Positions 8,087-36,494 are shown, counted from the first letter of the stretch. The stretch is 48,396 nt of DNA from Vitrella brassicaformis CCMP3155 (GCA_001179505.1 CDMY01000577.1:1-48396), one strand, 5' to 3'. The notes: generated from the sequence alone by a model not told the origin. Translations and numbers: made by a program.

Positions 8087-8185
8087 GCATATATACACCC
8101 AAGAAACCCCCCGCTAGGCAGAAAATAAAACAGTAAGTATCCACTTCCCCTCCTTCCCCCTTGGCCTTTGCTGAATACATCAATG

Positions 8186-8800
8186 TCATTCGCTGTCCCA
8201 CCTTGACTCATGCACCGGCTCGCCTTGGCTATCGAACTCAGATACCCTCCCCGTCCGGATTGATCGATACAACAAGGTAGAAAGGGGCGACGAGCCCACC
8301 CATCCATTTACATCCGCACTTTGTACATGGCGAGACTGGTCGCCCCTTACGCGGAGGCAAGGCAGATGTTGGTTGTCCAGCACAAACGTCAAAGGCGAGT
8401 AGCCACATTCGGGCGTCGAGCAGATCGTCGAATCAGCATCATCTGCAGGGCAACGCAGATCTCGCCTCCAACACCTTTGCAAGCTCCTAACACACGCACG
8501 CGAGGGACCGAGGAGAACAGAAGGACGCCCAATGAATGCGTGAAGCGGACGTCTCTTTCCCTGTGGGGCCGCTCTTGAGGTCCGAGGTGAGGCCCGAGAT
8601 GGTGATGTTGCGCTTCTTCACCATCAGCCGACACGCATTCACACACTCTCACCTGAATGAACACCACACACACACACACAGAAGCATTGCACACATTTAC
8701 CCCGCCTATGCATTTAGGGGCGGTCAATAGGCGCCACTCTCAAGGTCTTACCTGCGCATACTCACTTCTGCACGCGCTCTGCATGTATGCACTTGGTGCT
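8186..8800 (-). CDS. Possible coding exons of an unidentified minus-strand gene
   Basis: Splice-like signals and a C-ending codon run (LMVKKRNITISGLTSDLKSGPTG, ~8560-8630). No consistent full model could be built. Confidence 0.2.
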
Positions 8801-13329: not shown

Positions 13330-14741
13330 CTACAGTTCGTCTTTCTCGGTGCTCTCGGGCGCGTCGAATGGCAGGTCCATGCCGTACTCGTGTGGATACC
13401 GCAAGAGCTCCCCGTAGTCGGTGAGCTTCGACTGCACCACACTCTCAAGCTTCTCCAGCATAGTTGCCAGCGTCAAGGACGCGTCTGCACATAACATACA
13501 CGCACACATACATACATACATACATACATACAAGGGGAAATAAATGGATGCAATGCAGCGCATAGGTTAGATGGGTGGTTGTGTGTCGTGCCGGTGGGTG
13601 GGCGGATGGGTCCCGGGGTGGGGGATTCTGACCTTCATCTAGTCCGGCGTCAGCGAGCATGTCGGTGACGTCCCTCTCGTGGTCGCCCTCTGAGTGCTGG
13701 ACGATGATGGCCTCGATTTCCTTTTCGTCGATGACGCCGTCCTTGTTGGCGTCATAGCTATCGAACTCCTTCTTCATGCTCTCCTCGTCCTCCTCAGACG
13801 CTGACAACGACACTCATGGGCATGCCTGATCTGCTTTACATCTGCCTCCATTTGTCTGGTGCATCTGTTAACTCACCCTCCTGCCCCTTGAACTCGGCGA
13901 AGCTGATCTGCCTGTTGCCATCCGTGTCCTGCTGCTGAAGAAGCACAGCACAACCACATCAGCAGCAGAGGCAATCAGCCGTCGATGCACATCGCATGCC
14001 GTTGGCCTCGCCTCTTTTCTCAGCTCACCTTGAGTATTTCGTCTATTTCGACCTTCATGAGAGCTGGATCTTCGCCCACATGCAGCAGCTTCTTGAACTC
14101 CTCAACCGTCAGCTTGCCGTCTGGATATACACACGACACATGCACGACACGAACAAGAGAGAGGTGCATGAGTGTGTTGAAAGCAAGACCGCTATTCTGC
14201 CACTCACCGCCGTCCTTGTCTACCGTCTTGAACCGAAGCTGCTCTCACACACCAACACCGACGCATCGATCGATCAGTGGCCTGCCTGCATGATCCCCGT
14301 TTCTTGCTCACTCACCGCAATATCCTCCTTGCCCTCTGCCGCCGCCGCCTCATCCTCGCCGAAGTATGCATCGTGCAATTCGCTGAGGTCGACAAATCCG
14401 CTCTTGTCCTTGTCGATGGCATCGAACTCGAGGTTGCTCTGCCGCATCTGCACCTGTGGGTGGAGCCTCTTGAGCCACTCGCTCATCTCCTTCTTGGTCA
14501 GCTTGCCGTCGCCGTCCTTGTCCAGCACCGGGAACAGCTTGCTCATCCGCTCCTCTATCTCAGGGCGCGCCAAGCCCAGCGAGTCCTCCAGCCCCTCGGT
14601 CTCGTCCATCATCTCGTCCGCCATCTCGTCGTAGCCGAAGTCACCCTCGGCCTCCTCGCCGAACGTGATGTCGTCCTCATCCTCCTGAGCCACCGACGCA
14701 GCCACCAGGAAGGCACCGAAGATCAGCAGTGATAATCTCAT
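13330..14741 (-). CDS. ER-lumenal multi-EF-hand Ca2+-binding protein (CREC family, apicomplexan ERC-like)
   Basis: Signal peptide MRLSLLIFGAFLVAASVA. EF loops DKDGDGKLTKKE, DKDKSGFVDLSE, DGKLTVEE, DTDGNRQISFAE and DANKDGVIDEKE. C-terminal KDEL-stop at 13330. Confidence 0.92.
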
Positions 14742-23598: not shown

Positions 23599-24612
23599 GG
23601 TGCACCCACGCGCTTGCATGGCAGAGGTTGGTGTGTACGTATGCTGATCTCTCTGTCTGCGTTTGTGCAGCTGAAGGCCCGAGTGCCGGAGAGGAGGGGA
23701 GGGGAGGGAAGAGTGGGCACACTGTTCTGCTGTTATCGCATCGACAAGATGGCTCTTCGCTGCGTGCCCATACGGTCTACTGACTGCTCTGTCTTCTTTG
23801 CTCAACATATAGTAGGTCTCTCAGGATCTGTGTCTTTTACTGCGTTTTCTTTTTCCTTTTTGTAAATACCAACCGCTCTGCTGGGCTGCGATTGCGCCAT
23901 GTTGTGAGAGGGTGTGGCTCAGGCAGGTAGACCGTGGCCAACTAGTCCCATTTTAGGTCATATTTGATCGATTCAGTAGCCTGCTGCGTGCTCGTCCACC
24001 GAGCCGTCGTGTGAGATGTCCGCCATCCATGGGCAAGGGCAAGGTCATCATTGTTTGTCAGTCGTGGGGCGACATGGGAGAGGGGGAACACATCGCCGGT
24101 TGGTTGTGTCTGGGGGAGGGGGGACGGTCACCAGTGTCAGTCACGAGTATCTGAGTATGTGTGTGTTGTCTCCTGTCTCTTTTTCCGTCGTGGAGTGCTG
24201 CCTTATTGCCTTTCTGTTGGCTACTGCTAGCATTCCCTTGCACTGCTGTCCTGGGTGGTTGATTCGTCGTATGTCTGATTGTATTTGAGGCGGATGCATT
24301 GAGCGTAAGCTGTTCATATCGACGTGATTTACCCAGTACAGTAGGTCTGTGTCGCAAGTTCAAAATTACATGGAGGTGGGAGCCGTCATCTACCCGTAAT
24401 AGACGTGCATGCACTTTACAATCTTTACACCATTTCATTCAGTGACGATGGGTCTGTACACGAGAAGGCAACGGGTGCCTGCGCGGCTGACCTACACATC
24501 TCCCCCCCTCCATCCGACCAAAAAATACGCAACGCCAAAGGTGGACCAGCACGGCTTACACGAGTATACACAAAGTAGATAAAACGCGCGCCTTTCTGGC
24601 AATTTGTCTGCT

Positions 24613-27600
24613 TCACACACTGGTAAGGCCCCACGGCTGGAGTGCGCGGTCGACCGCCTCAGGGGCCGCCACATACGACAAGAGGAGGCCGAAGTTGGTG
24701 ACAGGCACGCCCATCTCGCGCAGATCGTCCACCCTGCATACACACACCACTCATGGCATAGGAGGGGCTGCGGGTCTGTCTGTCTTGACTGTCTGTTTAC
24801 TTACGTCTTAGTAGTTACCTGGCTTGCACCTTTTGTTTGTCGATGTAGCAGCCCCCGCAGTGAATCACCAACGAATACGCCCCCAGACCTGATAGCCAGA
24901 CAGGACACCATCAGCACAGCACGCAGGTGTGTTTGCTTGTGTTCGCATCGTATAATGGATATGCACACATGGATATGCACACACACAGCTCCACCCACCT
25001 TTGTCACTTTGGTCTTCAATGTCAGGAAACTCCCTCCCGAAGGCATGATCGACGGCTATGCTCGCCCCGCCTTGTGCCCTGATGTGTCCCGGAAGCTGCA
25101 CTGTCGCTATGTCGTTGCACAGCTGGGTGATCCTGTTGTGATTGCAGCCCTCAGCTACCAACACACGATCGCCTGCAGAAGACACAATGAAGACAGGGCG
25201 AGATTGTGTCTCCTCCTGTCTGTGTGCGTGACCTTGTTTGATGTGTTTGAATCTCTCGAGGCCCTCCACGAATGTGGGCAGCTGGCCGCCGCTCTGTCTG
25301 TGCAGAAGGGCGATGGAGAATGTGGTGATGTCGATCAGCGGCCGATTGGTGACCGGATCCAGCGTCCACGGGTGCACGATATCCATCGCCTGAACAACAC
25401 ACAGAGACACGGACGGGTCGATCGTTTATATGTTCACGTGCACCCTATGTGTGGAGCGATGGAGCCTACTTGTGAGTCTGTGATGAGCAGCTTGGGTCCT
25501 GCGGTTTGCTGCAGGACCATGTTGAGCATCTTGAGGAAGCGGCTCTTCTCCTCCTGCACCTCTGCTGGGTCGCTGCTGCGAGCCTGAAGCACACACATTG
25601 CCTGCATGATACGCCATGTACGTCAGTGCAGGCTGTGACATTGTACCTTTGCCAGGTCCATCCTGTAGGCGACTGTGGTCCCATAGTGGCGAATGATCGA
25701 CTCCTGCACCATCGCCTGCAGCAAGAACACTCACTCAGATTACTCACATAATAGCCCGACCAATTCAATGGAGGTGTGTGTTTGCGAACATGTACCTGTG
25801 GGCGCAGCAGCCTGCCTGCGGGCGTCTCTGCGTCCATGGGGATGTTAAGGAAGAACACACTGTCGGCCGTCAAGTAGGACTCGGGCACACAGGGAAGGTC
25901 GTCGTGATACATACTGCCGTGAGCAGGGGACGACTGACGGAAGGAAGGACGACACGAGTGTGCACACGTGTGGCTTAGTTTGCTGTCTGTGTTTGTGCTC
26001 ACCTGTATGAACTTGACAAGTCGGTCTGATGCCTCTGGGGCGCCGAGGTCGAGACACAGTACTCTGTGCATCGATGAAGGGTCGAGCATCTCCAGCAGAC
26101 GAACCACGCCATCCTGATTGAGAATCCATCCACACAGGCAGACAGAGCCAGTCACTTCTCATGCGCATTGCATTCGTATGGACGGACAGAGAGACACACC
26201 CATCTGTCTGTCCTGTCTCACAGACCTCGATCTGTCTCCTGGTCCATCCCTGGGTCGCGCCCTCCTGCTCCTTGATGTTAAAGACTATGCTGACCTCCTT
26301 GTGCCTCTTCTCGCCCATCTCGATCAGGTACCGCTCCCACTGCAGGGCATCGGGGGACGCCAAAGTGGGCTCCGTCGGTGAGAGCTTCTGCAACGGGTCC
26401 ACGACCAGCAGCGCGATGTCGCTCTCCTTCAACACGCTGCAAGGATGGAGGACGAAGACGTATACATAGTGCCCGTTGGTTCTTTTGGTGTGTGCGTGCG
26501 TCCCCCACCTGATCGTCTTCCTGCGCTTCTTCTCTCCGAGCTCGCCTCGTTCGTCAATGCCGGCCGTGTCGAAGAGCTTGGTGGGCCCGATGTCGTGCAG
26601 CTCCATCAGAGTGATCTTCGTGTCGGCCGTCGTGCCGGGCGTTGCATCCACAATAGACAAGTTGGAACGTGTCAACCTGCACTCACGTCCATGCGTGTAT
26701 CCAACTGCCCGCCGCATGTCGTGTGTGCACCTACTTGTTCATGAGTGTGGATTTGCCGGCATTCATGGCGCCGAAGAAGCCGATGTTGATCCTGGGCAGC
26801 TCGCTCGCACCGGGGGACTTGGGGGCTGCTGGTGATGGCTTGGAGGAGAAAGATCGCCTTGCAAGTGTGTGGTGGCTGCGGACATGCTGATAGAAATGCG
26901 GTGGGTCGCCCCACACCGCTTTCGCCGCCTCCTTGCCTACAACACATGCATCCGTACGTCCACAGACAGCAGATGGATCCATGTGTTGACTGACGGGTGC
27001 TCTGCTTCTATGTGAGTGCAGCATACCGATGGATTTGAGTCTGAAGTTGAGGCACTCCTTGCACTGCTCGGCCGTGTCGGTGATGCACGGCTTGCCCTCG
27101 TACAGCTGGTAGTTCTCTCTGGACAGACCGGGCCGCACACACAGATGGGTGTCATTCCGTGTGGATGCGTACGTGCGTCTGTCTATGTGTACCTGAATTG
27201 TGTGGGTGTGAGGATGGGCATCAGCACGTTAGCACCTCTCCGCAGTGCGACCTCGCGCCCGTTGGCATTGATCGCTTGCAAAGCTGCAGAGAGGTTGTGT
27301 ATGGACATAGAGAATGCGTGTGTGTGTAAGGGCATGTGTGCGTCCCTCCGTACGGTAGGTACCTGTTGTGGCGGCGATGTTGATGTTGCCCATGGTGATA
27401 CGGCATATGCTGATCAGGACCGTGGTCAAGTCGAACATCTCAGCCATGTGCTCCTTCTTGTCAACATGCCCGTACTGAGCTTGCCTGCGTGTCCATCGGC
27501 ACAAATGTGGACGCAGAAGCGTGCAAGTGGGTACGTGTGTGCCTAGAGTATCTACCACATGTCTGCCACAGGTGTGTCTTCCTGTGTGATGTAGGGCCCC

Positions 27601-29215
27601 ATGCCCACCATGTCGATATCCTCATCGCGAAAAAACACGATGTCCCTGACAGACACGGATGCATCATCGAAACGCACTCTTGTCAGCACAGAGTCCAGCC
27701 ACGCACCTGGCAAGATCCTCGAGAGTCTGTCCCGGGATGCCAATCATCACACCGCTGCCGACCTGAAAGCCAACTTTCTTGAGCAGTCGAAGACACGCCA
27801 GCCGCTTCGCAAAGCTGCATAAAGATGCCCATCGTGTGCACTCAGACACGTCTGTGCACGTTCATGCTTACGGTTGCGTGGGTGGGTGTATCTTGCTGTA
27901 CAGTTCAGGGTTTGACGACTCGATCCGCAGCAGATACCGGTGTCCCCCGGCCTCATGCAGCCGCCGGTAGTCGGCTTCGCTCAACTCACCCACTGATAAC
28001 GCTATGCCGATACCTGCGTCCACATACACATTCAGACGAAGACGTTTGGATTCGTCCTGTGCATGTTCGCGGACTCACGTACCTTTGTCTTTGAATCGTG
28101 GGTCCGAGCCGATGAATGACTCCGACCGGACCTCTTCGATCAGCTCGTCGATTGCGGGATCCTCAGCCTGGTTGCTGTGCCGCCGGTGGCGCTTCTCCTT
28201 CTCCAGATTAGTCAACACCGTCTCGCGCCTACAGATTGACACACATACGTGCCCTTACACACATCTGCATTTGCATTGTTTGCGCCGATCCATGTGTGCG
28301 TGGCGCACCTGATGGCTGTGATGACGTCTGTGAGGTACTTCATTCTTGCAGGGTGGTTCAGCTCGCCACTCTGCAGCATGACGGACCCATAGCCGTTGTC
28401 GTGCGCCCACAGAGCTATCGACAACAGCTGCTTCTTGCTGATCGTGTACCTGATCAACACAACAACCATAAGCCAGCACGTTCGTGGGTATTTGAAGATG
28501 ATCTTGGTGTGTGTGCGTGAATTGGGTGTGGCTCGGCTCACCGCTCCACGTTGGGTTGGTTCTTGCGTATGCCACAGTACAGGCAGTCGTTCTGGCACAC
28601 GTTGGAGAACTCTATCAAGCCACGATAGAACACCTCTGAAACACAACACACATACATACACACAAAGCCAGATCTACCATACCAATCCCACCACACGAGG
28701 AATACAATACGCCTTCCTTCGATGCTTACTTACTGTTGCCAAAGAATCTGCGAGTGACTTCGTTTGCATGAGCGAATAGTGCCTCCCGCACCCGCTCATC
28801 CCTCGATCCCTCCTTCCAGCACATCTCCATCAGCCCATGGATCTCATTCTGTCCCAGACACACCACCTCGCCCAGACCGATGCCCCTCTTCAACACGTCA
28901 CCCAACACACCTAACACAGACAGATCAGATAGACGCTTGCAATGCATCAACACCGAGTGATGGTGTTCCTTCCTTCGTGTACGTACCTGCGGCTGCATGT
29001 GCATCCATCATCGGTGCGTACAGCGGCGCGCCATCGTTGTTGGTGTTGATCTGTGCAGCCTTCGGGATGGCGAGAAAAGGAGATGTCGATGCCCGTGGCA
29101 CAGATGACGACGCCTGTGACGCGAGAGTGGACAAGAACCGGGACGGCAGGATGGACAGCGCCCGCATGGGCTCCACCGAGGACGGCAAAGCCCAGAAAAG
29201 GGGTCGAGCCAGCAT
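24613..29215 (-). CDS. HYDEF: [FeFe]-hydrogenase maturase HydE-HydF fusion (radical SAM + GTPase/FeS scaffold) with a mitochondrial-type presequence
   Basis: HydE: RGLIEFSNVCQNDCLYC (CxxxCxxC, ~28574-28597), LQSGE, GSGVMIGIPGQT, GMGPYI, NIAATTAL, GANVLMP, YQLYEGKPCITDTAEQCKEC (YxxY, Cx7Cx2C). HydF: GAMNAGKST, PGTT, DTAG, ITDSQ, TTFSI, EGCNH, IHCGGC, PVTNFG. Stop at 24613. Confidence 0.95.
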
Positions 29216-29477
29216 CAGCTCTTGATCACCAAAAATGATGTCGGTTTCACTCTGCTTTCGGCATTTCTCTCTGATGTATCATCCTCTGAGTACCGCAGCC
29301 GACTCACCGAGGAGTTCTGTCAGACAAATTGGTGCAACCCAAACACAAGGGAAAAAACCGATCGCGCGCTAAAGGATGCTTGCGACGGATGACGGCGCTC
29401 TCTAAGGATGCACCGACGTCAGCGATAGAAGTAGAGTGAAGCTGTTGAAGAGGATCGACGCCTGAGGACATCTGATC
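29216..29477. promoter_or_regulatory. Putative bidirectional promoter between HYDEF and HYDG (262 bp ATG to ATG)
   Basis: Divergent ATGs at 29215 (-) and 29478 (+). TAA(A)GGATGC occurs twice (~29369 and ~29403). Promoter function is inferred from geometry only. Confidence 0.55.
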
Positions 29478-30354
29478 ATGCTGAGTGTAGTTCGTCACAT
29501 CAGCGCACCATCTGCGGCCTTGCCGGCGCTGTCATGCCTCTCCAGCCGCCTTGCGAGTCCCTGTGCTGCCCGCACGCAGCGGTTTGTCCGTCACTTTGGG
29601 CTGTGGTCCAAGGAATTGGAGAAAGGACATGTGTACAAGGTAAGAGAAGGCAGACAACGACCAGATACACGTACGAGGGCATCGTGGTGGTTGCTGTGCT
29701 GTGTGTTTCGTCCCATCCAGGACGCCAATGAGATCATCAACCATGACCTGATATTCAAGCACCTGGAGGCCACCAAGGGCGCGGCGAAGGACAAGAACGT
29801 CATCAAGGACATCCTCGAACGCGCGAAGGAGCGATCGTTTCTCAAGGTGAGCATACAAGGTACATCCACACGTGTGTGGTGTGGGAGCACAAACAAGGTT
29901 TGGTGTGTTATGCTATGCGTTCAGGATGGTCCTGCGACTGGCGGCAGCGAGTACGTGCGGGGTTTGGAGCTCGACGAGTGTGCGACGCTGCTTAATGTGA
30001 ATCCCGACGACACAGACATCATGGAGGAGATATACAACACAGCATTCGACATCAAGAACCGCATATACGGTGGGTGCGTATGAGTAACTAAGGCGGAGAA
30101 ACACGGGAAGGGAGGCCGCGTGGTGCTGTGTCGATGCACCTATCAGGCAATCGCATAGTGTTGTTTGCGCCTCTGTATTTGGCCAACTACTGCGTCAATG
30201 GGTGTGCGTACTGCGCCTTCCGGTCGTCCAACAAGGCCATACAGAGAACCAAACTGAGCGACCAACAGGTCACCGAACAGGTACGGGACGTGAATCGAAT
30301 CAATGGATGGATAGATAGCGCAGGCCCACACAACCACACAGACGGGACGGGCGC

Positions 30355-30391
<37 letters not shown>

Positions 30392-30824
30392 GTGAGTATA
30401 TTGGAGCGTCAGGGGCACCGCCGCATTCTGGCGCTGACTGGCGAGCATCCCGCTTACACGTTTGAGGACTTCCTGCACGCACTCAAACTCATCACCGAAG
30501 TCAGAACGGAGCCATGCGGCAGCATCAGACGGTATGCAATGCAACGCACCCTCATGTGTGCAGGCATGCCAGTGCATCCTGTGTTGTGTCTGGCTGTCTG
30601 TTTGTCTGTATGTCTGCAGCATCAATGTGGAGATTCCGTCTCTGTCGGTGTCCGACATGAAGCGTCTCAAGGCAGCCGACTGTGTGGGGACGTACACGCT
30701 GTTCCAGGAGACCTACCACAAGCCCACCTTCCACACCATGCACCCATGGGGGCCCAAGAGCCACTACGAAAACAGAGTACTCACACACGACAGAGCCATG
30801 AGAGGAGGTGAGCGAACGAGGGAC

Positions 30825-30855
<31 letters not shown>

Positions 30856-32123
30856 ATGTGAATGCGCACATCTCTGTGTGTCTCATGGTGTCACTCACTA
30901 CAGGGCTTGACGATGTGGGTATCGGTGTGTTGTTCGGCCTGTATGACTATCGCTTCGAGTGCATGGCCATGCTCATGCACTCCAACCACCTGGAAGAGGT
31001 ACGTACTTCCACACACACGAGCAAACCAGCTATGCGCACACACACATATATGGGTGGGGTATTGTGTGCGTGTGTGCAGGAGTATCGTGCCGGCCCCCAC
31101 ACCATCTCCGTGCCCCGCATGCGCCCGGCAATGGGCTCAGGCGTGGCGTCGGACCCGCCTTATCCGGTCGATGACGCCCACTTCAAGAAGCTGGTGGCCA
31201 TCCTCCGCATCGCCGTCCCATACACGGGCATGATCCTCTCGACACGCGAGGCGCCAGAAATGAGAGGTGAGTGAGACGGGAGATAACATACGACAGCATA
31301 CCTGACGACGAGCAATTGACTGTTTTGTGTGCTTGGTCGTGTTTGCGTGTGTGTCACTTTCAGCCCATCTGTTGCGTGTGGGTATGAGCCAGATGTCTGC
31401 TGGTTCGTCCACCGAGGTGGGCGGGTACCACCGCCACGCCACCCAGCGGACAGACGAGTCGCTCGGCGATCTCACCATGCAAGCACTCCTGCCAGAGAAA
31501 TATGGCAAGGCAGCAGCTGGTGACACGGCGATGGATCACGAGCACACGGACCCCAACCTGGGCGGGCAGTTCCAGCTGGAGGACACCAGAAGCAGCGAGG
31601 AGATTGTTCACGACCTGCTCGAATCGGGGTAGGGTTCGCATGGGACGCAAAATGACTGACACAAGAATGGTCCATGTTTGGCTGTGCGTCAGTTACGTGC
31701 CATCGTGGTGCACGGCGTGCTACCGCAAGGGCCGCACAGGGGAGCACTTTATGAAGATAGCCAAGGCAGGCAACATCCACAACTTCTGCCACCCCAACTC
31801 GCTCCTCACACTCCAGGTGAGGGCGTTCGAATATGCTCATTCGACAGCATCCACGTGTGCCCCATATTCTGTCTGGTGTCTCTGTTTTGTGCAGGAGTGG
31901 CTCAACGACTATGCCAGCCCCGAGATCAAGGAACTGGGCAACAAGGTGCGTCTGGAATGCCTTGAGGGGGGCGGTTTTAGGTGTGCATACATATGTTCAC
32001 CTTTCCTTGTTGCCGCAGGTGATAGCCCGCGAGAAGGAGATCGACCTGTCAGACTCGGCCAAGCGGCTGCTGGACCGCAAGATGGAGGCCGTCAACAAGG
32101 GACAGCACGACGTCTACATATGA
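29478..32123 (+). CDS. HYDG: [FeFe]-hydrogenase maturase HydG (radical SAM tyrosine lyase) with a mitochondrial-type presequence
   Basis: GNRIVLFAPLYLANYCVNGCAYC, INVEIP, LFQETY, GLDDVGIGVLFGL, GPHTISVPR, YTGMILSTRE, SQMSAGS, GQF, and the auxiliary cluster motif PSWCTAC-x22-CHPN (Cx2Cx22C). Ends DVYI-stop. Confidence 0.97.
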
Positions 32124-34033
32124 TCCATGCATGATACATTAACGACACGACACATTTCTGGCCTGGCTGCACCGCCCCCATCCCTGCCTGCATGCTGTGT
32201 ACATAGTCAGTCAGCCCTGCCTGCATTGCACATATCGACTGACTGGCTAATGTGCTGCCCGTTGTGTGTGCTGTGCACTGTGTGAATACCTACCTAGTTG
32301 ACTGGCTGGCCCATTTTTCGTCTCGCCACACACGTCTGTCTCGCCACTCTTTTTCGCGCACACGAACACGAAAGGCCGTCTGGCCGATCGAGCCGCGGGT
32401 GCTGGGAGGGAGGGAGGGAGCATGGGGCACACGGGCATCTGCCTGCTCGTGAGGGGCCTGCAGCTAGTCGACTGCGTGGGTGTGTGCATGTAGTCAGGGT
32501 TTTCTTTGCATGGGGGGCGTCGCGTCAGAGGGTGGGCCGTCGGGGGTGTATGCTGGCACTGCAACATGCATTTCGCATCTCCCTCTTACAGGTGTACATG
32601 AAGGTGCCTTAATTGTGCATGTGTCTGTCGTGTGGATGATTGATGTACAGTGAGAATTCAGAGTGTGTTGGGCCGTATTTTTCCTTCCCCTGTGTGTGCA
32701 GTGCACGTTGATTGTTTGCAATGATCGACTGTGTGATTGATTCATGGCTACCGCCACTTTGCATTGCATGGACCTTCTTGTCACTGACTACCCATAACGC
32801 TCCCACACGCCCGCGCGTGAGTCGTCACTCTCCACCCCCCTCCCTATACACAAATCAAGTATATAACCCATCCCTGTTCAAGCAGACATTGCGCTACAGC
32901 CACTCGATTATCCAATGAAAAGTATCTTGGAGGCTGGCTCGGTGAGTGTCGAGGCGGTCAACAGCGCCACCACCACACGCGTGACACAACCAACATAAAA
33001 CAAAGCGACGACCCAGCCACCCCCAACCTACTCCTCCCCTCCCCACACCCCGCTCGTTAATCAGTTTCTGCAGCTGCTAGATTCTCCCAACAGGGCCCCC
33101 GAGGGCTGCCATCCTTCGGTGGGCCTGCCGTGCGTGCTCGTCAACTCCTTCGCCCTCATCAACCCTCTTGACTTCGGTGGGCTTCCTTCGTGTCGTGTCG
33201 GCTGGTGTGACAGCTTTGTTCGTCGGGCAAAGAAGGAGCAGCAGCCACCTGCAGACAGCAACAGCGGCAACCAAGTATGGCCATATGTGCATGGCAGTCG
33301 TCTTTTTCGTGCCGACCTGGTCAGCGTTGGGTGAGCAGGGACCGGCGAAGGCTTGGTGACTGCCTGTGTCGGGCATTCGCCCCTCTACGGGCCTGCCAGA
33401 TGGGTTGTTGGCAGAGAGCGGCCGGTGTTGTCCGAGAGGTCTGGTCCTGATGCAGCGATGCGATGGCACGCTCTCTCTTGTCCCTCCTCTCCTCCGCATC
33501 GCCTCCACTTGGCTGCAGCTCTCGATCCTGGTCCTGCTCCCTGCTGACGGTGCCCCTCTCGCCCGTTGGGGGGGTCTGGCATCGTCGATTGTTGCGACGA
33601 GGATGGGGTGCTGTCCACACGCAGCTGGGCCGGCGATGGTGCGACAGGGCATGAGGGCCTTGCGTGGCCTGAGAGGCCGTCGAATGACACCACCGGCCTT
33701 GCGTGGCCGTCCTGTCAGTGCGATTGGCGGCCGGACCTCTTGAGACGCTTGGACGGAGGCCGGTCCGCCACCCAGTCGTCATGTCAGACACAAAAGCGGT
33801 CCATAAGACGCTCGTGCGCACGGCGGGGAGACGGGGCGTGTGCAGCGCGGTAGGTGATTGTGAAAGTCTTGAGCGGGCCGAGGGTCGATGCGTGACGGAC
33901 CTGAAAGGCGTCACAGGAGAGATTGACGCACACGTGGGCGTGGCGTCTGGCGTCCTCTGTGCTCTGTGTTGATGCTTCTGTACCTCCAGGCAGTAGGTAG
34001 TGAAGCCGTCACTCGTGGTCTTCCACTTCCACT

Positions 34034-35670
34034 CTACAGGCAGACCAAGCACACACACAACCACACCTTTGCCACACGGACGTCTCCAGTATATGCAGGC
34101 CGCTGCTCACCGAGTCGTACGCCCTCGAATGTCCCCCCCATTTCCTCTGTCGTCGCCTCCCGTCGACGGAACCCCAGTCCATCGCAGAGCTGCCCCACAC
34201 TCTCCCTCGCCTTGACTTGCTGACGCAGCTCATCCATCATGCGCCCGGCATCCTCTAGCGCCCTCTCACTGTCACCCACACTGAGGGACGCCTTACTCCT
34301 ATGCGCCGATGCTCCTTTCGCCTTGACGGGCATCGTCATCAACTGCCGCCAGAACTCGTCAGCGAGCTCCTTGGCCTCGATCGAGCCGTGCGTGCCCTCC
34401 GAAAAGGCCTTGTGCGCCCCCATGCCGTGCACCACCCATGCCCTCCTCCCTTGATCATACGACACGCCCTCGGGGACGCTGCCGTGCGACGCAGGCGCCC
34501 GCTTGAATGGTGATAGCGTTGTGCGGCGGATTGGCTTGGCCGCCTTCCTGCTGGTGCTGCTGCTGGTGGCGCGTGACGTGAGGGACTGCCGTCGGCTTCT
34601 GCTCTGTGTGGTGGGGCGAGTCGGGTCGTAGAAGAGTGGCACAGGGGGGAGGGAGTAGGACGAGGGTGAGATGAGTGCTGGGGGGTTGGCGCCTGTATGG
34701 TGGATGGGGTTGCGGGAAACGGGGAGAGCTGAGAGAAGATAAACCACACGTGAGAGCCAGTCGTGAGAGCCCCGTGGATCTTGCCCTGTTCACCTTTGAT
34801 AGTATTCTCCCAGGCCTCTTGTCTCTCGCGCACAAATGCCTCGGCTTGTTCTTTGGCCGTGTCGCTCCCTCCTTCTTGGCTCACAGGGACCTCCAGCACC
34901 CTCAGATACCCGCCACACCGCCACACAGCCCGCCAGCACTTCTTGTCTTCATCATACACCACGCCGGTCGTTTGATGGCTACTCGCCGGCTCCGGCGTTT
35001 CGCCCTGCGTGGTGCGGATCTCCTCGCAGAAGGCCATGGCTTGCTTCTTGGCGCGTTCGGAGCCTCTGTGGCGGCTTCTGTGAGTACACACACACGCATG
35101 TGTCGCTGCGTGTGTGCATATGGAGGTGTGATGGTTGTGGCTGACCTGAAATGTCGCGTGGTTAGTCGTCCGGCGCCGTCGAGATGGATGACGGCCCAGC
35201 CCACGTGGATGGGGTCAGGGTTGAACTCGACGCGGGGCAGGTGGCCAGGCCGGCCGAGGTACCCACCTGACATGACGAGTGCCTGCTTAGCTTATTCTCA
35301 TCCATCTTGTGCACCTGTCTGCTTGTTCCTGCCCGGTTGTTTTTGGTCGCTGTCAGAATTGGTGTGAATGGACTCGGCCTTCATATCCCTATTGTCGTCA
35401 CGCCCATCCCTCGCCAACGGCAACGAACCATCACCCACGGCACATACACCTAAAGACGAAGGCATTTCGACGTGTGATTGATCATTGTTCATACTTCCCA
35501 TCCCACTCACCTTGTCCCACGCCTTTGACCGTCTCGAGCCGCGGCGTGGCCAAGGCAGGTCGCTTCCGGGGCCGCTTTGGCGACGCCTTGCCGGTGTGCC
35601 CATCGTCTTTGTGTAAGCTCTGGTCGGTTGGCCTGAGCCGGGCGTCGCTGGGGTCGCCTCCCTCTACCAT
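34034..35670 (-). CDS. ApiAP2-type transcription factor with three divergent AP2-like domains (gene ends uncertain; may extend to ~33060 and ~36480)
   Basis: LPRVEFNP...WAVIHLDGAGRLTTRHF-RSRHRGSERAKKQAMAF; TGVVYDEDKKCWRAVWR...GGSDTAKEQAEAF; EGVSYDQGRRAWVV...KAFSEGTHGSIEAKELADEF. NLS-like PKRPRKRP upstream. Confidence 0.7.
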
Positions 35671-36494
35671 TGAGTCGGTGCTGTCAGGCGATTTTGATAA
35701 AGGTGCAACCTCATCAGTCCGTCAAACCAGCTGACGCAGATCACACGCGAAAACAGTGGATATCACAGGAATATGCGGGTGCATCTCTTTCCTTCTTACT
35801 CACCTCACCTGCATGTGGTGCGCGACTTCTGCGTGGCAGCAAGGCAGCAGAGGACGGTGACAAAAGGAGCGAATTGAGGTGCGGCACCGATGAGAGATCT
35901 GAATCAGCTCCGCCCCACATTGCGAGGTCACCACGACTCGACCCTAACCCACAAGTAGACTCATCGCAGGGGCGTGATTGCTGCCGCCTTTGCGGTTTGA
36001 TAGCTTCTGGCTGGTTTCCGTCGCCAGCACACGTGGACAGCACACGTGGACTGATCCGCCATGGACGTCAGTGAGGTGAGTTTTCTTGATGGCTCACAAG
36101 GCATGCAGGGCAGAGGATGGATGATACACGAGCACTAAAGAGAGAATCCAGACGGAGAAAGGCCTTCACTGCTTGCTCTGTGTGTTGCTCGGCATTCCCT
36201 GTAGCTTGTTGTTGCGAACGCGCAGGCTGTGAAAGACAGGGTACGCCACACGACGCCATTTCCTTGCCGCTTCTTCGGCTGCACAGTGGTGCTGTGTGTG
36301 TTGTATGTTGTGTGAATAGATCATAGCACAGCTGTCGCGCCTTCTTGAGCAAGACGCCGCCAGCATCGCTGCACCGGTGGGTCAAACTCACTGGCGGATA
36401 AACATGCCGGTCACTGTGCGGTCCTTTGATTGCTTCATCTGACCTTAAGGCGTCGTCTCCTGAGGCATGGGTGCTCAATTATCAGCTGGGCTCG

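What the first reader, a model, noticed from the sequence alone, without database searches (positions are those of the whole stretch)
24613..32123. Complete H-cluster maturation set (HYDEF fusion + HYDG) as a divergent pair, apparently mitochondrion-targeted, in a chromerid-type alga
All catalytic motifs look intact. A HYDEF fusion next to a divergent HYDG is established in Chlamydomonas, where the system is chloroplastic. Here both N-termini are Arg/Ser/Leu/Ala-rich, nearly acid-free and lack a signal peptide (MLARPLFWALPSS...PSRFLST; MLSVVRHISAPSAALPALSCLSSRL...VRHF). Complex-plastid import in this lineage needs a bipartite leader, so these look mitochondrial. That implies a facultatively H2-producing mitochondrion in a photosynthetic apicomplexan relative. 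The same fusion and synteny in a distant lineage would point to transfer of the pair as a unit or to deep conservation. No HydA lies in the window. Caveat: tight head-to-head pairs also occur at 14741/14911 and 45498/45772.
Basis: partly seen in the sequence, partly recalled or inferred. Interest (0 to 1): 0.75.

Follow-up and report, generated by a model that had tools for sequence, protein, structure and literature searches.

The report
Vitrella hydrogenase-maturase gene pair HydEF/HydG
The window carries a real, expressed, back-to-back pair of genes (a HydE-HydF fusion and HydG) that build the metal cofactor of [FeFe]-hydrogenase in the alga Vitrella brassicaformis; their presence and the fusion are already published, and only the suggested mitochondrial location remains an untested prediction.

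Summary
The window is the whole 48,396-bp contig CDMY01000577.1 of Vitrella brassicaformis CCMP3155.

- **Genes.** HydEF (988 aa, 22 exons, minus strand 29215-24613) and HydG (573 aa, 12 exons, plus strand 29478-32123) sit head to head, 262 bp apart.
- **Models.** My models equal the deposited proteins (HydEF CEM24053.1, Vbra_296; HydG Vbra_297). One spliced RNA contig confirms every intron.
- **Motifs.** All cluster and GTPase motifs are intact.
- **Novelty.** The set is already known. A 2021 review tabulates Vitrella as having HYDA, PFO, HYDG and a fused HYDEF. A 2019 paper calls the chromerid anaerobic gene set "well known".
- **Fusion range.** It also occurs in Paulinella micropora and Amoebidium parasiticum.
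- **Synteny.** The divergent HydG-HydEF/HydF arrangement recurs in six of seven other loci examined.
- **Trees.** Chromerid HydG and HydF fall in the "green-type" clade, not with diatom and pelagophyte sequences.
- **Location.** The mitochondrial reading is plausible. The leaders are basic, nearly acid-free and much less hydrophobic than real Vitrella signal peptides. They resemble HydG presequences of diatoms, pelagophytes, Chromera and hydrogenosome-bearing protists. No dedicated predictor or experiment was available.

The scan had already noted Vitrella's HydA on other DNA.

The parts
24613..29215 (-). HydEF gene (CDS, 22 exons, 988 aa; Vbra_296 / CEM24053.1): a HydE radical-SAM maturase fused in frame to the HydF GTPase scaffold
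   Evidence: Gene model; identical to P0177; spliced RNA contig L009; NCBIfam HydE 298 bits and HydF 242 bits; PDB HydE and HydF matches
28987..29215 (-). HydEF exon 1. It encodes about 76 residues upstream of the conserved HydE core, including the basic, Ser/Leu/Ala-rich leader MLARPLFWALPSS...
   Evidence: An in-frame stop lies 23 codons upstream with no ATG in between. The exon is present in RNA contig L009.
27027..28910 (-). HydE domain exons (residues about 77-478), with the radical-SAM motif CQNDCLYC at residues 149-156
26790..26936 (-). HydE-HydF linker (KEAAKAVWGDPPHFYQHVRSHHTLARRSFSSKPSPAAPKSPGASELPR), read through in one exon
   Evidence: RNA contigs cross it.
24613..26789 (-). HydF domain exons (residues about 525-988): P-loop GAMNAGKS, DTAG, and the CNH...HCGGC cluster ligands
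   Evidence: HydF tree
29216..29477 (.). 262-bp spacer between the two start codons, presumably a shared bidirectional promoter. RNA contigs run through it.
   Evidence: sequence; X11 contig reaches 29383; L009 is collinear over 28985-29640
29478..32123 (+). HydG gene (CDS, 12 exons, 573 aa; Vbra_297): a radical-SAM tyrosine lyase with the C-terminal CX2CX22C cluster site
   Evidence: identical to P0309; NCBIfam 491.9 bits; PDB 4wcx at 6e-137
29478..29600 (+). HydG leader: 41 residues before the conserved WSKELE block, with no acidic residue and an R-x-F motif at its end (VRHF/GL)
   Evidence: A stop lies 5 codons upstream.
24256..24612 (-). HydEF 3' untranslated region (at least this far)
   Evidence: The L009 block 8135-8615 aligns to 24736-24256

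Best explanation
Shown: these are the two nuclear genes of Vitrella brassicaformis that encode all three accessory proteins needed to build the 2Fe subcluster of [FeFe]-hydrogenase. They are intact, spliced and transcribed.

From established knowledge of the families: HydG is a radical-SAM tyrosine lyase with an extra C-terminal cluster, and it makes the Fe(CO)2(CN) synthon. The HydE half of HydEF, also radical SAM, processes that synthon. The HydF half, a GTPase scaffold with CxH...HCxxC ligands, holds the finished 2Fe unit and hands it to apo-HydA. HydA is encoded elsewhere as Vbra_650.

Inferred: the two genes are transcribed divergently from a 262-bp spacer, which should keep their expression coupled.

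Shown by synteny and trees: the fusion-plus-divergent-HydG cassette is an old unit. It is shared with green algae and other eukaryotes, and it belongs to one 'green-type' lineage of eukaryotic maturases that was already present in the chromerid ancestor.

Inferred, not shown: the products are most likely imported into the mitochondrion by N-terminal presequences, as is HydA. That would give Vitrella an aerobic mitochondrion able to make or consume H2 under hypoxia.

My confidence in gene identity and function is about 0.97. My confidence in the mitochondrial location is about 0.55.
For: Identity: searches give the family scores, motifs and PDB matches. Searches show the models equal the deposited Vitrella proteins.

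Expression and structure: one search shows spliced contigs in two runs. Searches show one RNA contig with all introns removed. P0309 is also recorded from MMETSP.

Organism.

Cassette conservation:
- HydG lies divergently upstream of HydEF or HydF in Chrysophaeum, Parachlorella, three ENA contigs and GCA_006365155.1, but not in Pedinophyceae.
- Locus tags or gene numbers are adjacent in Micractinium, Tetradesmus, C. schloesseri, Edaphochlamys, Gonium and Hariotina (gene12305/12307), and two apart in Paulinella.

Phylogeny:
- In the HydF tree, every fusion plus the pelagophyte and Chromera HydF form a 100/100 clade, with Vitrella and Chromera basal (they are sisters at 52/44).
- In the HydG tree, Vitrella and Chromera group at 98*, inside a 99* clade with Viridiplantae, Paulinella and Rhabdomonas.
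- Joining chromerid HydG to diatom and pelagophyte HydG is rejected (AU p = 0.0003).

Location:
- The leaders are basic with 0-1 acidic residue in the first 40 residues.
- Their hydrophobic maxima lie below those of the two Vitrella plastid SUF proteins scored; the two secreted proteins of this window were judged by eye only.
- HydG ends its leader in an R-x-F motif.
- HydA Vbra_650 carries a similar leader of about 95 residues.
- HydG leaders of diatoms, pelagophytes, Nannochloropsis and Chromera are the same short basic type as those of Stygiella, Tritrichomonas and Pelomyxa.
- Chromera's stand-alone HydF and the HydEF of plastid-less Amoebidium carry comparable leaders.
- Chromerid plastid import uses a signal peptide plus a transit peptide (PMC6668581).
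Against: - The location rests on crude hydropathy and charge counts, two scored signal-peptide controls (plus two judged by eye) and analogy. No SignalP, TargetP, MitoFates or ASAFind run was possible.
- The HydG leader has a 16-residue uncharged stretch (ISAPSAALPALSCLSS; maximum 9-residue hydropathy 1.88). That is not far below the weakest plastid control, SufE at 2.13.
- The Phe motif after the cleavage site is weak in Vitrella, so a non-canonical plastid leader cannot be excluded.
- Vitrella's PNO/PFO model (Vbra_21448) starts directly at the mature domain with no leader. An obvious electron source is therefore not predicted to be in the same compartment.
- The HydF half scores below the NCBIfam equivalog cut-off.
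- No H2 production by Vitrella is documented in the papers I could read.
Confidence: 0.6

Rival explanations
1. The same functional cassette, but its products go to the complex plastid, as in Chlamydomonas. There the hydrogenase would draw electrons from photosynthetic ferredoxin, and import would use weak or non-canonical signal peptides.
For: The genes belong to the 'green-type' clade whose best-studied members act in the chloroplast (references 125-126 listed). The HydG and HydA leaders contain moderately hydrophobic uncharged stretches (maximum 7-residue hydropathy 1.9-2.0). ASAFind+ misses about 10% of Vitrella plastid proteins, and the Phe motif is weak there.
Against: Real signal peptides from the same genome are clearly more hydrophobic: 2.4-3.0 over 7 residues in the two scored plastid controls, and two secreted proteins of this window have obvious hydrophobic cores by eye. 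The HydEF leader has an acidic residue at position 15, and its hydrophobic run is 5-7 residues long. At 41 residues the HydG leader is short for a bipartite signal. HydG leaders in diatoms and pelagophytes, where the plastid-import rule is strict, have no hydrophobic core at all.
Confidence: 0.15
2. The same functional cassette, but the proteins stay in the cytosol. On this reading the N-terminal extensions are not working targeting signals.
For: Vitrella's PNO/PFO model has no leader at all. From my own recollection, not checked here, Naegleria hydrogenase and maturases were found in the cytosol despite predicted presequences. Mitochondrial predictors reach only about 0.7-0.86 precision on Vitrella.
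Against: Three separate proteins (HydEF, HydG, HydA) each carry a 40-95-residue basic, acid-poor extension. The Chromera orthologues have the same feature. That is hard to explain without selection for import.
Confidence: 0.15
3. Artefact: a bacterial or green-algal contaminant contig, or decaying genes that are no longer used.
For: The closest named relatives of HydG outside the chromerids are green algae.
Against: The pair carries 32 canonical spliceosomal introns, all removed in RNA. The contig also carries an AP2-domain gene and other eukaryotic genes. The stretch is held by runs from seven studies. Both reading frames are intact with every motif present. Identity to any green-algal sequence is at most about 50% for HydEF and about 69% for HydG. 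Chromera has an orthologous HydG.
Confidence: 0.02

Closest known systems
Chlamydomonas reinhardtii HYDEF (Cre06.g296750) and HYDG (Cre06.g296700)
   Same: HydE and HydF are fused in one polypeptide. The neighbouring gene is HydG (adjacent gene ids; their divergent orientation is my own recollection of Posewitz et al. 2004). The motifs are the same, and both belong to the same HydF and HydG clades.
   Different: Sequence identity is only about 45-50% for HydEF. Vitrella branches outside the chlorophyte cluster. The Chlamydomonas proteins work in a primary chloroplast behind a simple transit peptide. Vitrella has a four-membrane plastid that requires a signal peptide, and these leaders lack one, so a different compartment is predicted.
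Stand-alone HydE, HydF and HydG of hydrogenosomes and anaerobic mitochondria (Trichomonas/Tritrichomonas, Stygiella, Pelomyxa, Mastigamoeba, Acanthamoeba)
   Same: These are the same three families, with N-terminal presequence-type leaders of similar length and composition ahead of the conserved WS.E block of HydG. The Pelomyxa entries are annotated mitochondrial (PMC8887013).
   Different: There the proteins are separate rather than fused. They fall in other clades of the HydG and HydF trees. The hosts are anaerobes or microaerophiles without plastids.
Maturase gene clusters of ochrophyte algae (Chrysophaeum taylorii hydE-hydG-hydF; the Nannochloropsis 'hydrogenase gene cluster' mentioned in PMC3897525)
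   Same: HydG is divergently transcribed from HydF with a very short spacer, 75 bp in Chrysophaeum. Chrysophaeum HydF belongs to the same 100/100 clade as the fusions.
   Different: HydE and HydF are separate genes. The Chrysophaeum genes appear intron-less. Pelagophyte HydG belongs to a different HydG clade from the chromerid one.
HydEF fusions of Paulinella micropora and Amoebidium parasiticum
   Same: Both are full-length E-F fusions of 994-998 aa. Amoebidium is the sequence most similar to the Vitrella HydF domain (59%). Paulinella HydG (g3521) lies two gene numbers from its HydEF (g3523).
   Different: They come from unrelated supergroups, Rhizaria and Opisthokonta. Amoebidium has no plastid. 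I saw no genomic context for either.

Membership tests
HydG ([FeFe]-hydrogenase maturase, TIGR03955) | Whole-protein score above the curated equivalog cut-off | tested here: met
   491.9 bits against a cut-off of 312.15. The best PDB match is HydG 4wcx at 6e-137.
HydG ([FeFe]-hydrogenase maturase, TIGR03955) | N-terminal radical-SAM CX3CX2C motif plus the C-terminal CX2CX22C site for the auxiliary cluster, which separates HydG from ThiH | tested here: met
   CVNGCAYC at residues 160-167 and CTACYRKGRTGEHFMKIAKAGNIHNFC at 487-513. ThiH scores 275.7 bits, below its own cut-off of 380.
HydG ([FeFe]-hydrogenase maturase, TIGR03955) | Tyrosine lyase activity producing CO and CN ligands | not testable with these tools
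   Needs biochemistry.
HydE (TIGR03956) | Score above the curated cut-off, and a radical-SAM CX3CX2C motif | tested here: met
   298.2 bits against a cut-off of 254.6. CQNDCLYC lies at residues 149-156. PDB HydE 3cix and 7o1p match at 2.7e-69.
HydF (TIGR03918) | Whole-protein score above the curated equivalog cut-off | tested here: inconclusive
   242.2 bits against a cut-off of 325.55. It is still the best GTPase family hit, covering profile positions 6-385 of 392. The model is calibrated on prokaryotes, and the eukaryotic sequence has insertions.
HydF (TIGR03918) | GTPase P-loop, HydF dimer/tetramer domains, and a C-terminal CxH...HCxxC cluster site | tested here: met
   GAMNAGKS at 533, DTAG at 581, CNH at 898 and HCGGC at 956. 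Pfam PF01926 and PF18133 are on record for P0177. PDB HydF 3qq5, 5lad and 5kh0 match. The domain sits inside the HydF tree.
HydEF fusion class (known from green algae) | HydE and HydF are read in one frame with no stop, and are present as one transcript | tested here: met
   The junction lies within one exon (26735-26936). The full CDS is 988 aa. The spliced RNA contig translates exactly to the fusion. It sits in a 100/100 clade with the other fusions.
Mitochondrial matrix presequence | An N-terminal 20-60-residue extension that is basic, acid-poor and amphipathic, with an R-2/R-3 processing motif and no signal peptide | tested here: inconclusive
   The composition fits: HydG has 5 R+K and 0 D+E in its first 40 residues, a hydrophobic moment of 0.61, and VRHF just before the mature block. 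HydEF has 3 R+K and 1 D+E. No trained predictor or experiment was available.
Bipartite plastid leader of chromerids (signal peptide plus transit peptide) | An N-terminal ER signal peptide with a hydrophobic core | tested here: not met
   The maximum 9-residue hydropathy is 1.37 for HydEF and 1.88 for HydG. The Vitrella plastid proteins SufE and SufS reach 2.13-2.43, and two secreted proteins of this window show clearly hydrophobic cores by eye, not scored. This is a crude test with few controls. The import rule is taken from PMC6668581.

The most novel reading that the evidence does not exclude
Vitrella, and probably Chromera and several ochrophyte algae, run the [FeFe]-hydrogenase system in an otherwise aerobic mitochondrion rather than in the plastid. 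They would use a 'green-type' HydEF/HydG cassette whose simple leaders default to the mitochondrion in a cell with a four-membrane plastid. The HydE-HydF linker would be a relic of HydF's own presequence: the motif R-x-[FY]-[SH]-[ST] recurs in several of the fusion linkers examined and in the leader of Chromera's stand-alone HydF. It might be cut after import to release two proteins.
Probability: 0.35. Interest if true: 0.6.

Novelty: already known. Interest (0 to 1): 0.3.

Why it matters
If the location prediction holds, a photosynthetic relative of apicomplexans would have an oxygen-respiring mitochondrion that can also handle H2. That bears on how the anaerobic tool-kit is distributed between plastid and mitochondrion in algae with complex plastids, and on the metabolic starting point of apicomplexan mitochondria.

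The gene content itself is not news. The session's modest additions are:
- the wider spread of the HydEF fusion, now seen in Paulinella and Amoebidium;
- the conserved head-to-head HydG-HydEF/HydF cassette;
- the shared 'green-type' ancestry of both chromerid genes;
- the observation that HydG leaders in all the red-plastid algae sampled look mitochondrial.

These sharpen a hypothesis that a localisation experiment can test.

Tried and rejected
- An Rfam scan of the window found nothing.
- The papers most likely to discuss chromerid hydrogenase location are not held: Flegontov et al. 2015 (doi 10.1093/molbev/msv021) and Stairs et al. 2015 (PMC4571565). I cannot say whether a mitochondrial prediction is already in print.
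- The localisation tables of Füssy et al. 2019 do not list Vbra_296, Vbra_297 or Vbra_650.
- A search for a Chromera organelle proteome paper found nothing usable.
- A supplement search by gene-id prefix failed because of how the ids are stored, so only two plastid control leaders were collected.
- Word searches cannot reach the roughly 1000-aa fusion from exon-sized queries. I therefore spent the single exhaustive protein search on a HydF C-terminal piece. It did not return Vitrella's own protein, but it gave the first full-length fusions.
- I considered contamination and pseudogene readings and rejected them (see rivals).
- A recent transfer from a sampled chlorophyte is unlikely: HydEF identity is at most about 50%, and Vitrella branches outside the chlorophyte clade.

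Full report
**What is there**

The region contains two intron-rich genes on opposite strands.
- Translated pieces hit the NCBIfam equivalogs for HydG on the plus strand, and for HydE followed by HydF on the minus strand.
- Contigs of two public runs (X11, X12) lie on the stretch with GT..AG gaps on the plus-strand gene and CT..AC gaps on the minus-strand gene, so they are spliced RNA. Two other runs cover it without gaps, as DNA.
- From those junctions and canonical splice sites I assembled both genes:
  - HydG: 29478-32123, 12 exons, 573 aa.
  - HydEF: 29215-24613, 22 exons, 988 aa.
- Both translations are identical to database proteins P0309 and P0177.
- A Logan contig of run ERR558152 (L009) carries both coding sequences with every intron removed. 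It is collinear with the genome from HydG exon 1 through the spacer into HydEF exon 1.
- Both N-termini are therefore confirmed at RNA level, and no extra 5' coding exon is spliced on in that assembly. In-frame stops lie 5 codons (HydG) and 23 codons (HydEF) upstream of the start codons.

**Organism**

- The supplement of PMC8003979 lists these exact proteins as jgi|Vitbras1|16622|Vbra_296.t1 (HYDEF) and 16623|Vbra_297.t1 (HYDG).
- The protein database names P0177 as CEM24053.1 / A0A0G4G6Q7 of Vitrella brassicaformis CCMP3155, on a contig of 48,396 bp. The record is GCA_001179505.1:CDMY01000577.1.
- The window is that whole contig.

**Family membership**

- Full-length HydG scores 491.9 bits against a cut-off of 312. 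The HydE half scores 298.2 against 254.6. The HydF half scores 242.2 against 325.6, below a prokaryote-calibrated threshold, but it is aligned end to end and is the best hit.
- Solved HydG (4wcx, 4rtb), HydE (3cix and others) and HydF (3qq5, 5lad, 5kh0) are the top structural relatives.
- All motifs are present: both radical-SAM CX3CX2C sites, the HydG CX2CX22C site, the HydF P-loop, and CNH...HCGGC.
- The set HydE, HydF and HydG is complete within 7.5 kb.
- HydA is not among the genes called between 14613 and 39215; I did not scan the remainder of the window. It is Vbra_650, a hydrogenase fused to an FAD/NADPH reductase module. An earlier finding of this scan, s1-201650, covers it on another piece of the genome.

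**Is it new?**

No.
- Table 4 of PMC8003979 (2021) marks Vitrella as PFLA+, PFO+, HYDA+, HYDE/HYDF fused, HYDG+ and HCP+.
[quoted passage not shown] It reports expression of hydrogenase maturases in aerobically grown Chromera.
- None of the papers I could read discusses where the proteins reside in chromerids.

**Evolutionary context added here**

*Distribution of the fusion.* Starting from a HydF piece and then a profile of four fusions, I recovered about 40 full-length HydEF fusions.
- Most are from chlorophytes.
- One is from Paulinella micropora (Rhizaria) and one from Amoebidium parasiticum (Ichthyosporea), and several come from unnamed metagenomic eukaryotes.
- PMC3897525 treated the fusion as a green-algal invention, so its range is wider than that.

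*HydF tree* (careful, 51 rows).
- All fusions, together with the stand-alone HydF of pelagophytes and of Chromera velia (A0A0G4HYN4, 621 aa), form a 100/100 clade.
- Vitrella, Chromera and Amoebidium sit at its base, outside a 92/99 clade of chlorophytes, Paulinella and pelagophytes.
- Vitrella and Chromera are sisters in the best tree, with weak support of 52/44.

*HydG tree* (quick, 64 rows).
- Vitrella and Chromera are sisters (98*, 69-71% identity).
- They lie inside a 99* clade with Chlorophyta, Chara, Coleochaete, Paulinella and Rhabdomonas.
- That clade is separate from the diatom/pelagophyte, red/glaucophyte and anaerobe clades.
- Forcing chromerids together with diatoms and pelagophytes costs 115 log-likelihood units (AU p = 0.0003). 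A caveat: I named this group after seeing the tree.

Both genes thus tell the same story. They are a "green-type" pair already present in the common ancestor of the two chromerids, and not a recent gift from a sampled chlorophyte.

**Synteny**

| Source | Arrangement |
|---|---|
| Parachlorella kessleri | HydG divergent, immediately upstream of HydEF |
| ENA contig ERZ25039514 | HydG divergent, upstream of HydEF |
| ENA contig ERZ18440741 | HydG divergent, upstream of HydEF |
| ENA contig ERZ27247445 | HydG divergent, upstream of HydEF |
| NCBI assembly GCA_006365155.1 (unnamed) | HydG divergent, upstream of HydEF |
| Chrysophaeum taylorii | hydE(+) hydG(-) hydF(+); 75 bp between HydG and HydF |
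| Pedinophyceae sp. YPF-701 | not adjacent |

- Consecutive locus tags or gene numbers indicate adjacency in Micractinium, Tetradesmus, Chlamydomonas schloesseri, Edaphochlamys, Gonium and Hariotina. In Paulinella micropora the gene numbers are two apart.
What carries weight is the conservation of this particular pair across lineages. It supports "inherited or transferred as a unit".

**Targeting**

Chromerid plastid proteins need an ER signal peptide followed by a transit peptide (PMC6668581). I could not run dedicated predictors, so I compared simple properties.

| Protein | Role in the comparison | Max mean hydropathy, 9 residues (first 40) |
|---|---|---|
| HydEF | test | 1.37 |
| HydA Vbra_650 | test | 1.78 |
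| HydG | test | 1.88 |
| SufE | Vitrella plastid control | 2.13 |
| SufS | Vitrella plastid control | 2.43 |
| Two secreted proteins of this window (MVMKLRVCLGGLLLAGVIDA..., ...VGYVVVIWVAAAA...) | signal-peptide controls, judged by eye, not scored | clearly hydrophobic cores |

- The Hyd leaders are rich in Arg, Ser, Ala and Leu and have 0-1 acidic residue in their first 40 positions.
- The HydG leader ends in VRHF just before the conserved WSKELE block.
- HydG leaders of Seminavis, Amphora, Aureoumbra, Chrysophaeum, Nannochloropsis and Chromera are short basic presequences with no hydrophobic core. They are very like those of Stygiella, Tritrichomonas and Pelomyxa, whose maturases act in mitochondrion-derived organelles.
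- Chromera HydF and Amoebidium HydEF have similar leaders.

These points favour mitochondrial import, but the test is crude and the controls are few. The uncharged stretch in the HydG leader is not far below the weakest plastid control. The Vitrella PNO/PFO model has no leader at all. I put the mitochondrial reading at about 0.55, with plastid and cytosol at about 0.15 each.

**Mechanism**

- From the known chemistry of the families: HydG supplies the Fe(CO)2(CN) unit, HydE converts it, and HydF assembles the 2Fe subcluster and delivers it to HydA.
- Shown here: the genes are intact, spliced and transcribed in ordinary cultures, and RNA covers the spacer that separates them.
- Inferred: co-regulation from a shared bidirectional promoter, the compartment, and any physiological H2 production.

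**Verdict**

The localisation idea is reasonable, still untested, and applies more widely than Vitrella.

Noticed in passing
window 26790-26936 (- strand); P0182, P0172, P0158, P0231, P0180, P0023: The HydE-HydF linker of Vitrella (..TLARRSFSSK..) carries an R-x-[FY]-[SH]-[ST] motif. The same motif recurs in the linkers of other HydEF fusions: SRRSFSTH, TRRFSSG, ARSYHTS/ARTYSS, TRMYHTS and RRYYSTS. It also occurs near the end of the N-terminal leader of Chromera's stand-alone HydF (SVRSFSSS). The linker looks like a relic of HydF's own presequence.
   Followed up: partly
L009 (Logan contig of ERR558152), equivalent to window 24256-35930: One spliced RNA contig joins three genes: the AP2-domain gene (- strand), HydG (+ strand) and HydEF (- strand). 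Transcripts therefore overlap, or at least abut, both 5'-to-5' across the 262-bp spacer and 3'-to-3' between HydG and the AP2 gene.
   Followed up: partly
L001:6756-11488 (Chrysophaeum taylorii JAQMWT010000351.1): The pelagophyte has an apparently intron-less three-gene cluster hydE(+) hydG(-) hydF(+), with only 75 bp between HydG and HydF. Its HydF groups with the pedinophyte HydEF fusion (100/99), while its HydG groups with diatoms. The cluster may have a mixed origin.
   Followed up: partly
P0231 (Amoebidium parasiticum), P0024 and P0314 (Paulinella micropora): Full-length HydEF fusions exist in an ichthyosporean (an opisthokont without a plastid) and in Paulinella, well outside green algae. 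Amoebidium is the sequence most similar to Vitrella's HydF domain, at 59%.
   Followed up: partly
Vbra_21448.t1 (supplement of PMC8003979), not in this window: Vitrella's 'PFO' is a PNO-type fusion with a C-terminal NADPH-P450-reductase module. In this model it starts directly at the mature domain (MKLDIVDGNTAAAH...) with no leader, unlike HydA, HydEF and HydG.
   Followed up: no
window 24600-32200, runs X13-X17: Marine sediment metagenomes from 2023-2025 hold 7-29% of the sampled 31-letter words of this stretch. This suggests Vitrella or a very close relative occurs in sediments. I did not lay these runs on the stretch.
   Followed up: no
window 30349-30397 and 30817-30861: Short simple repeats (CA/GT-type runs, read as CVCVCV in translation) sit inside two HydG introns. 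Genomic contigs break there.
   Followed up: no
HydG residues about 421-460 (window about 31480-31600): Vitrella HydG has an insertion of about 40 residues (..TQRTDESLGDLTMQALLPEKYGKAAAGDTAMDHEHTDPNLGG..). It lies between the TIM-barrel part and the C-terminal cluster domain, relative to the solved Thermoanaerobacter HydG.
   Followed up: no
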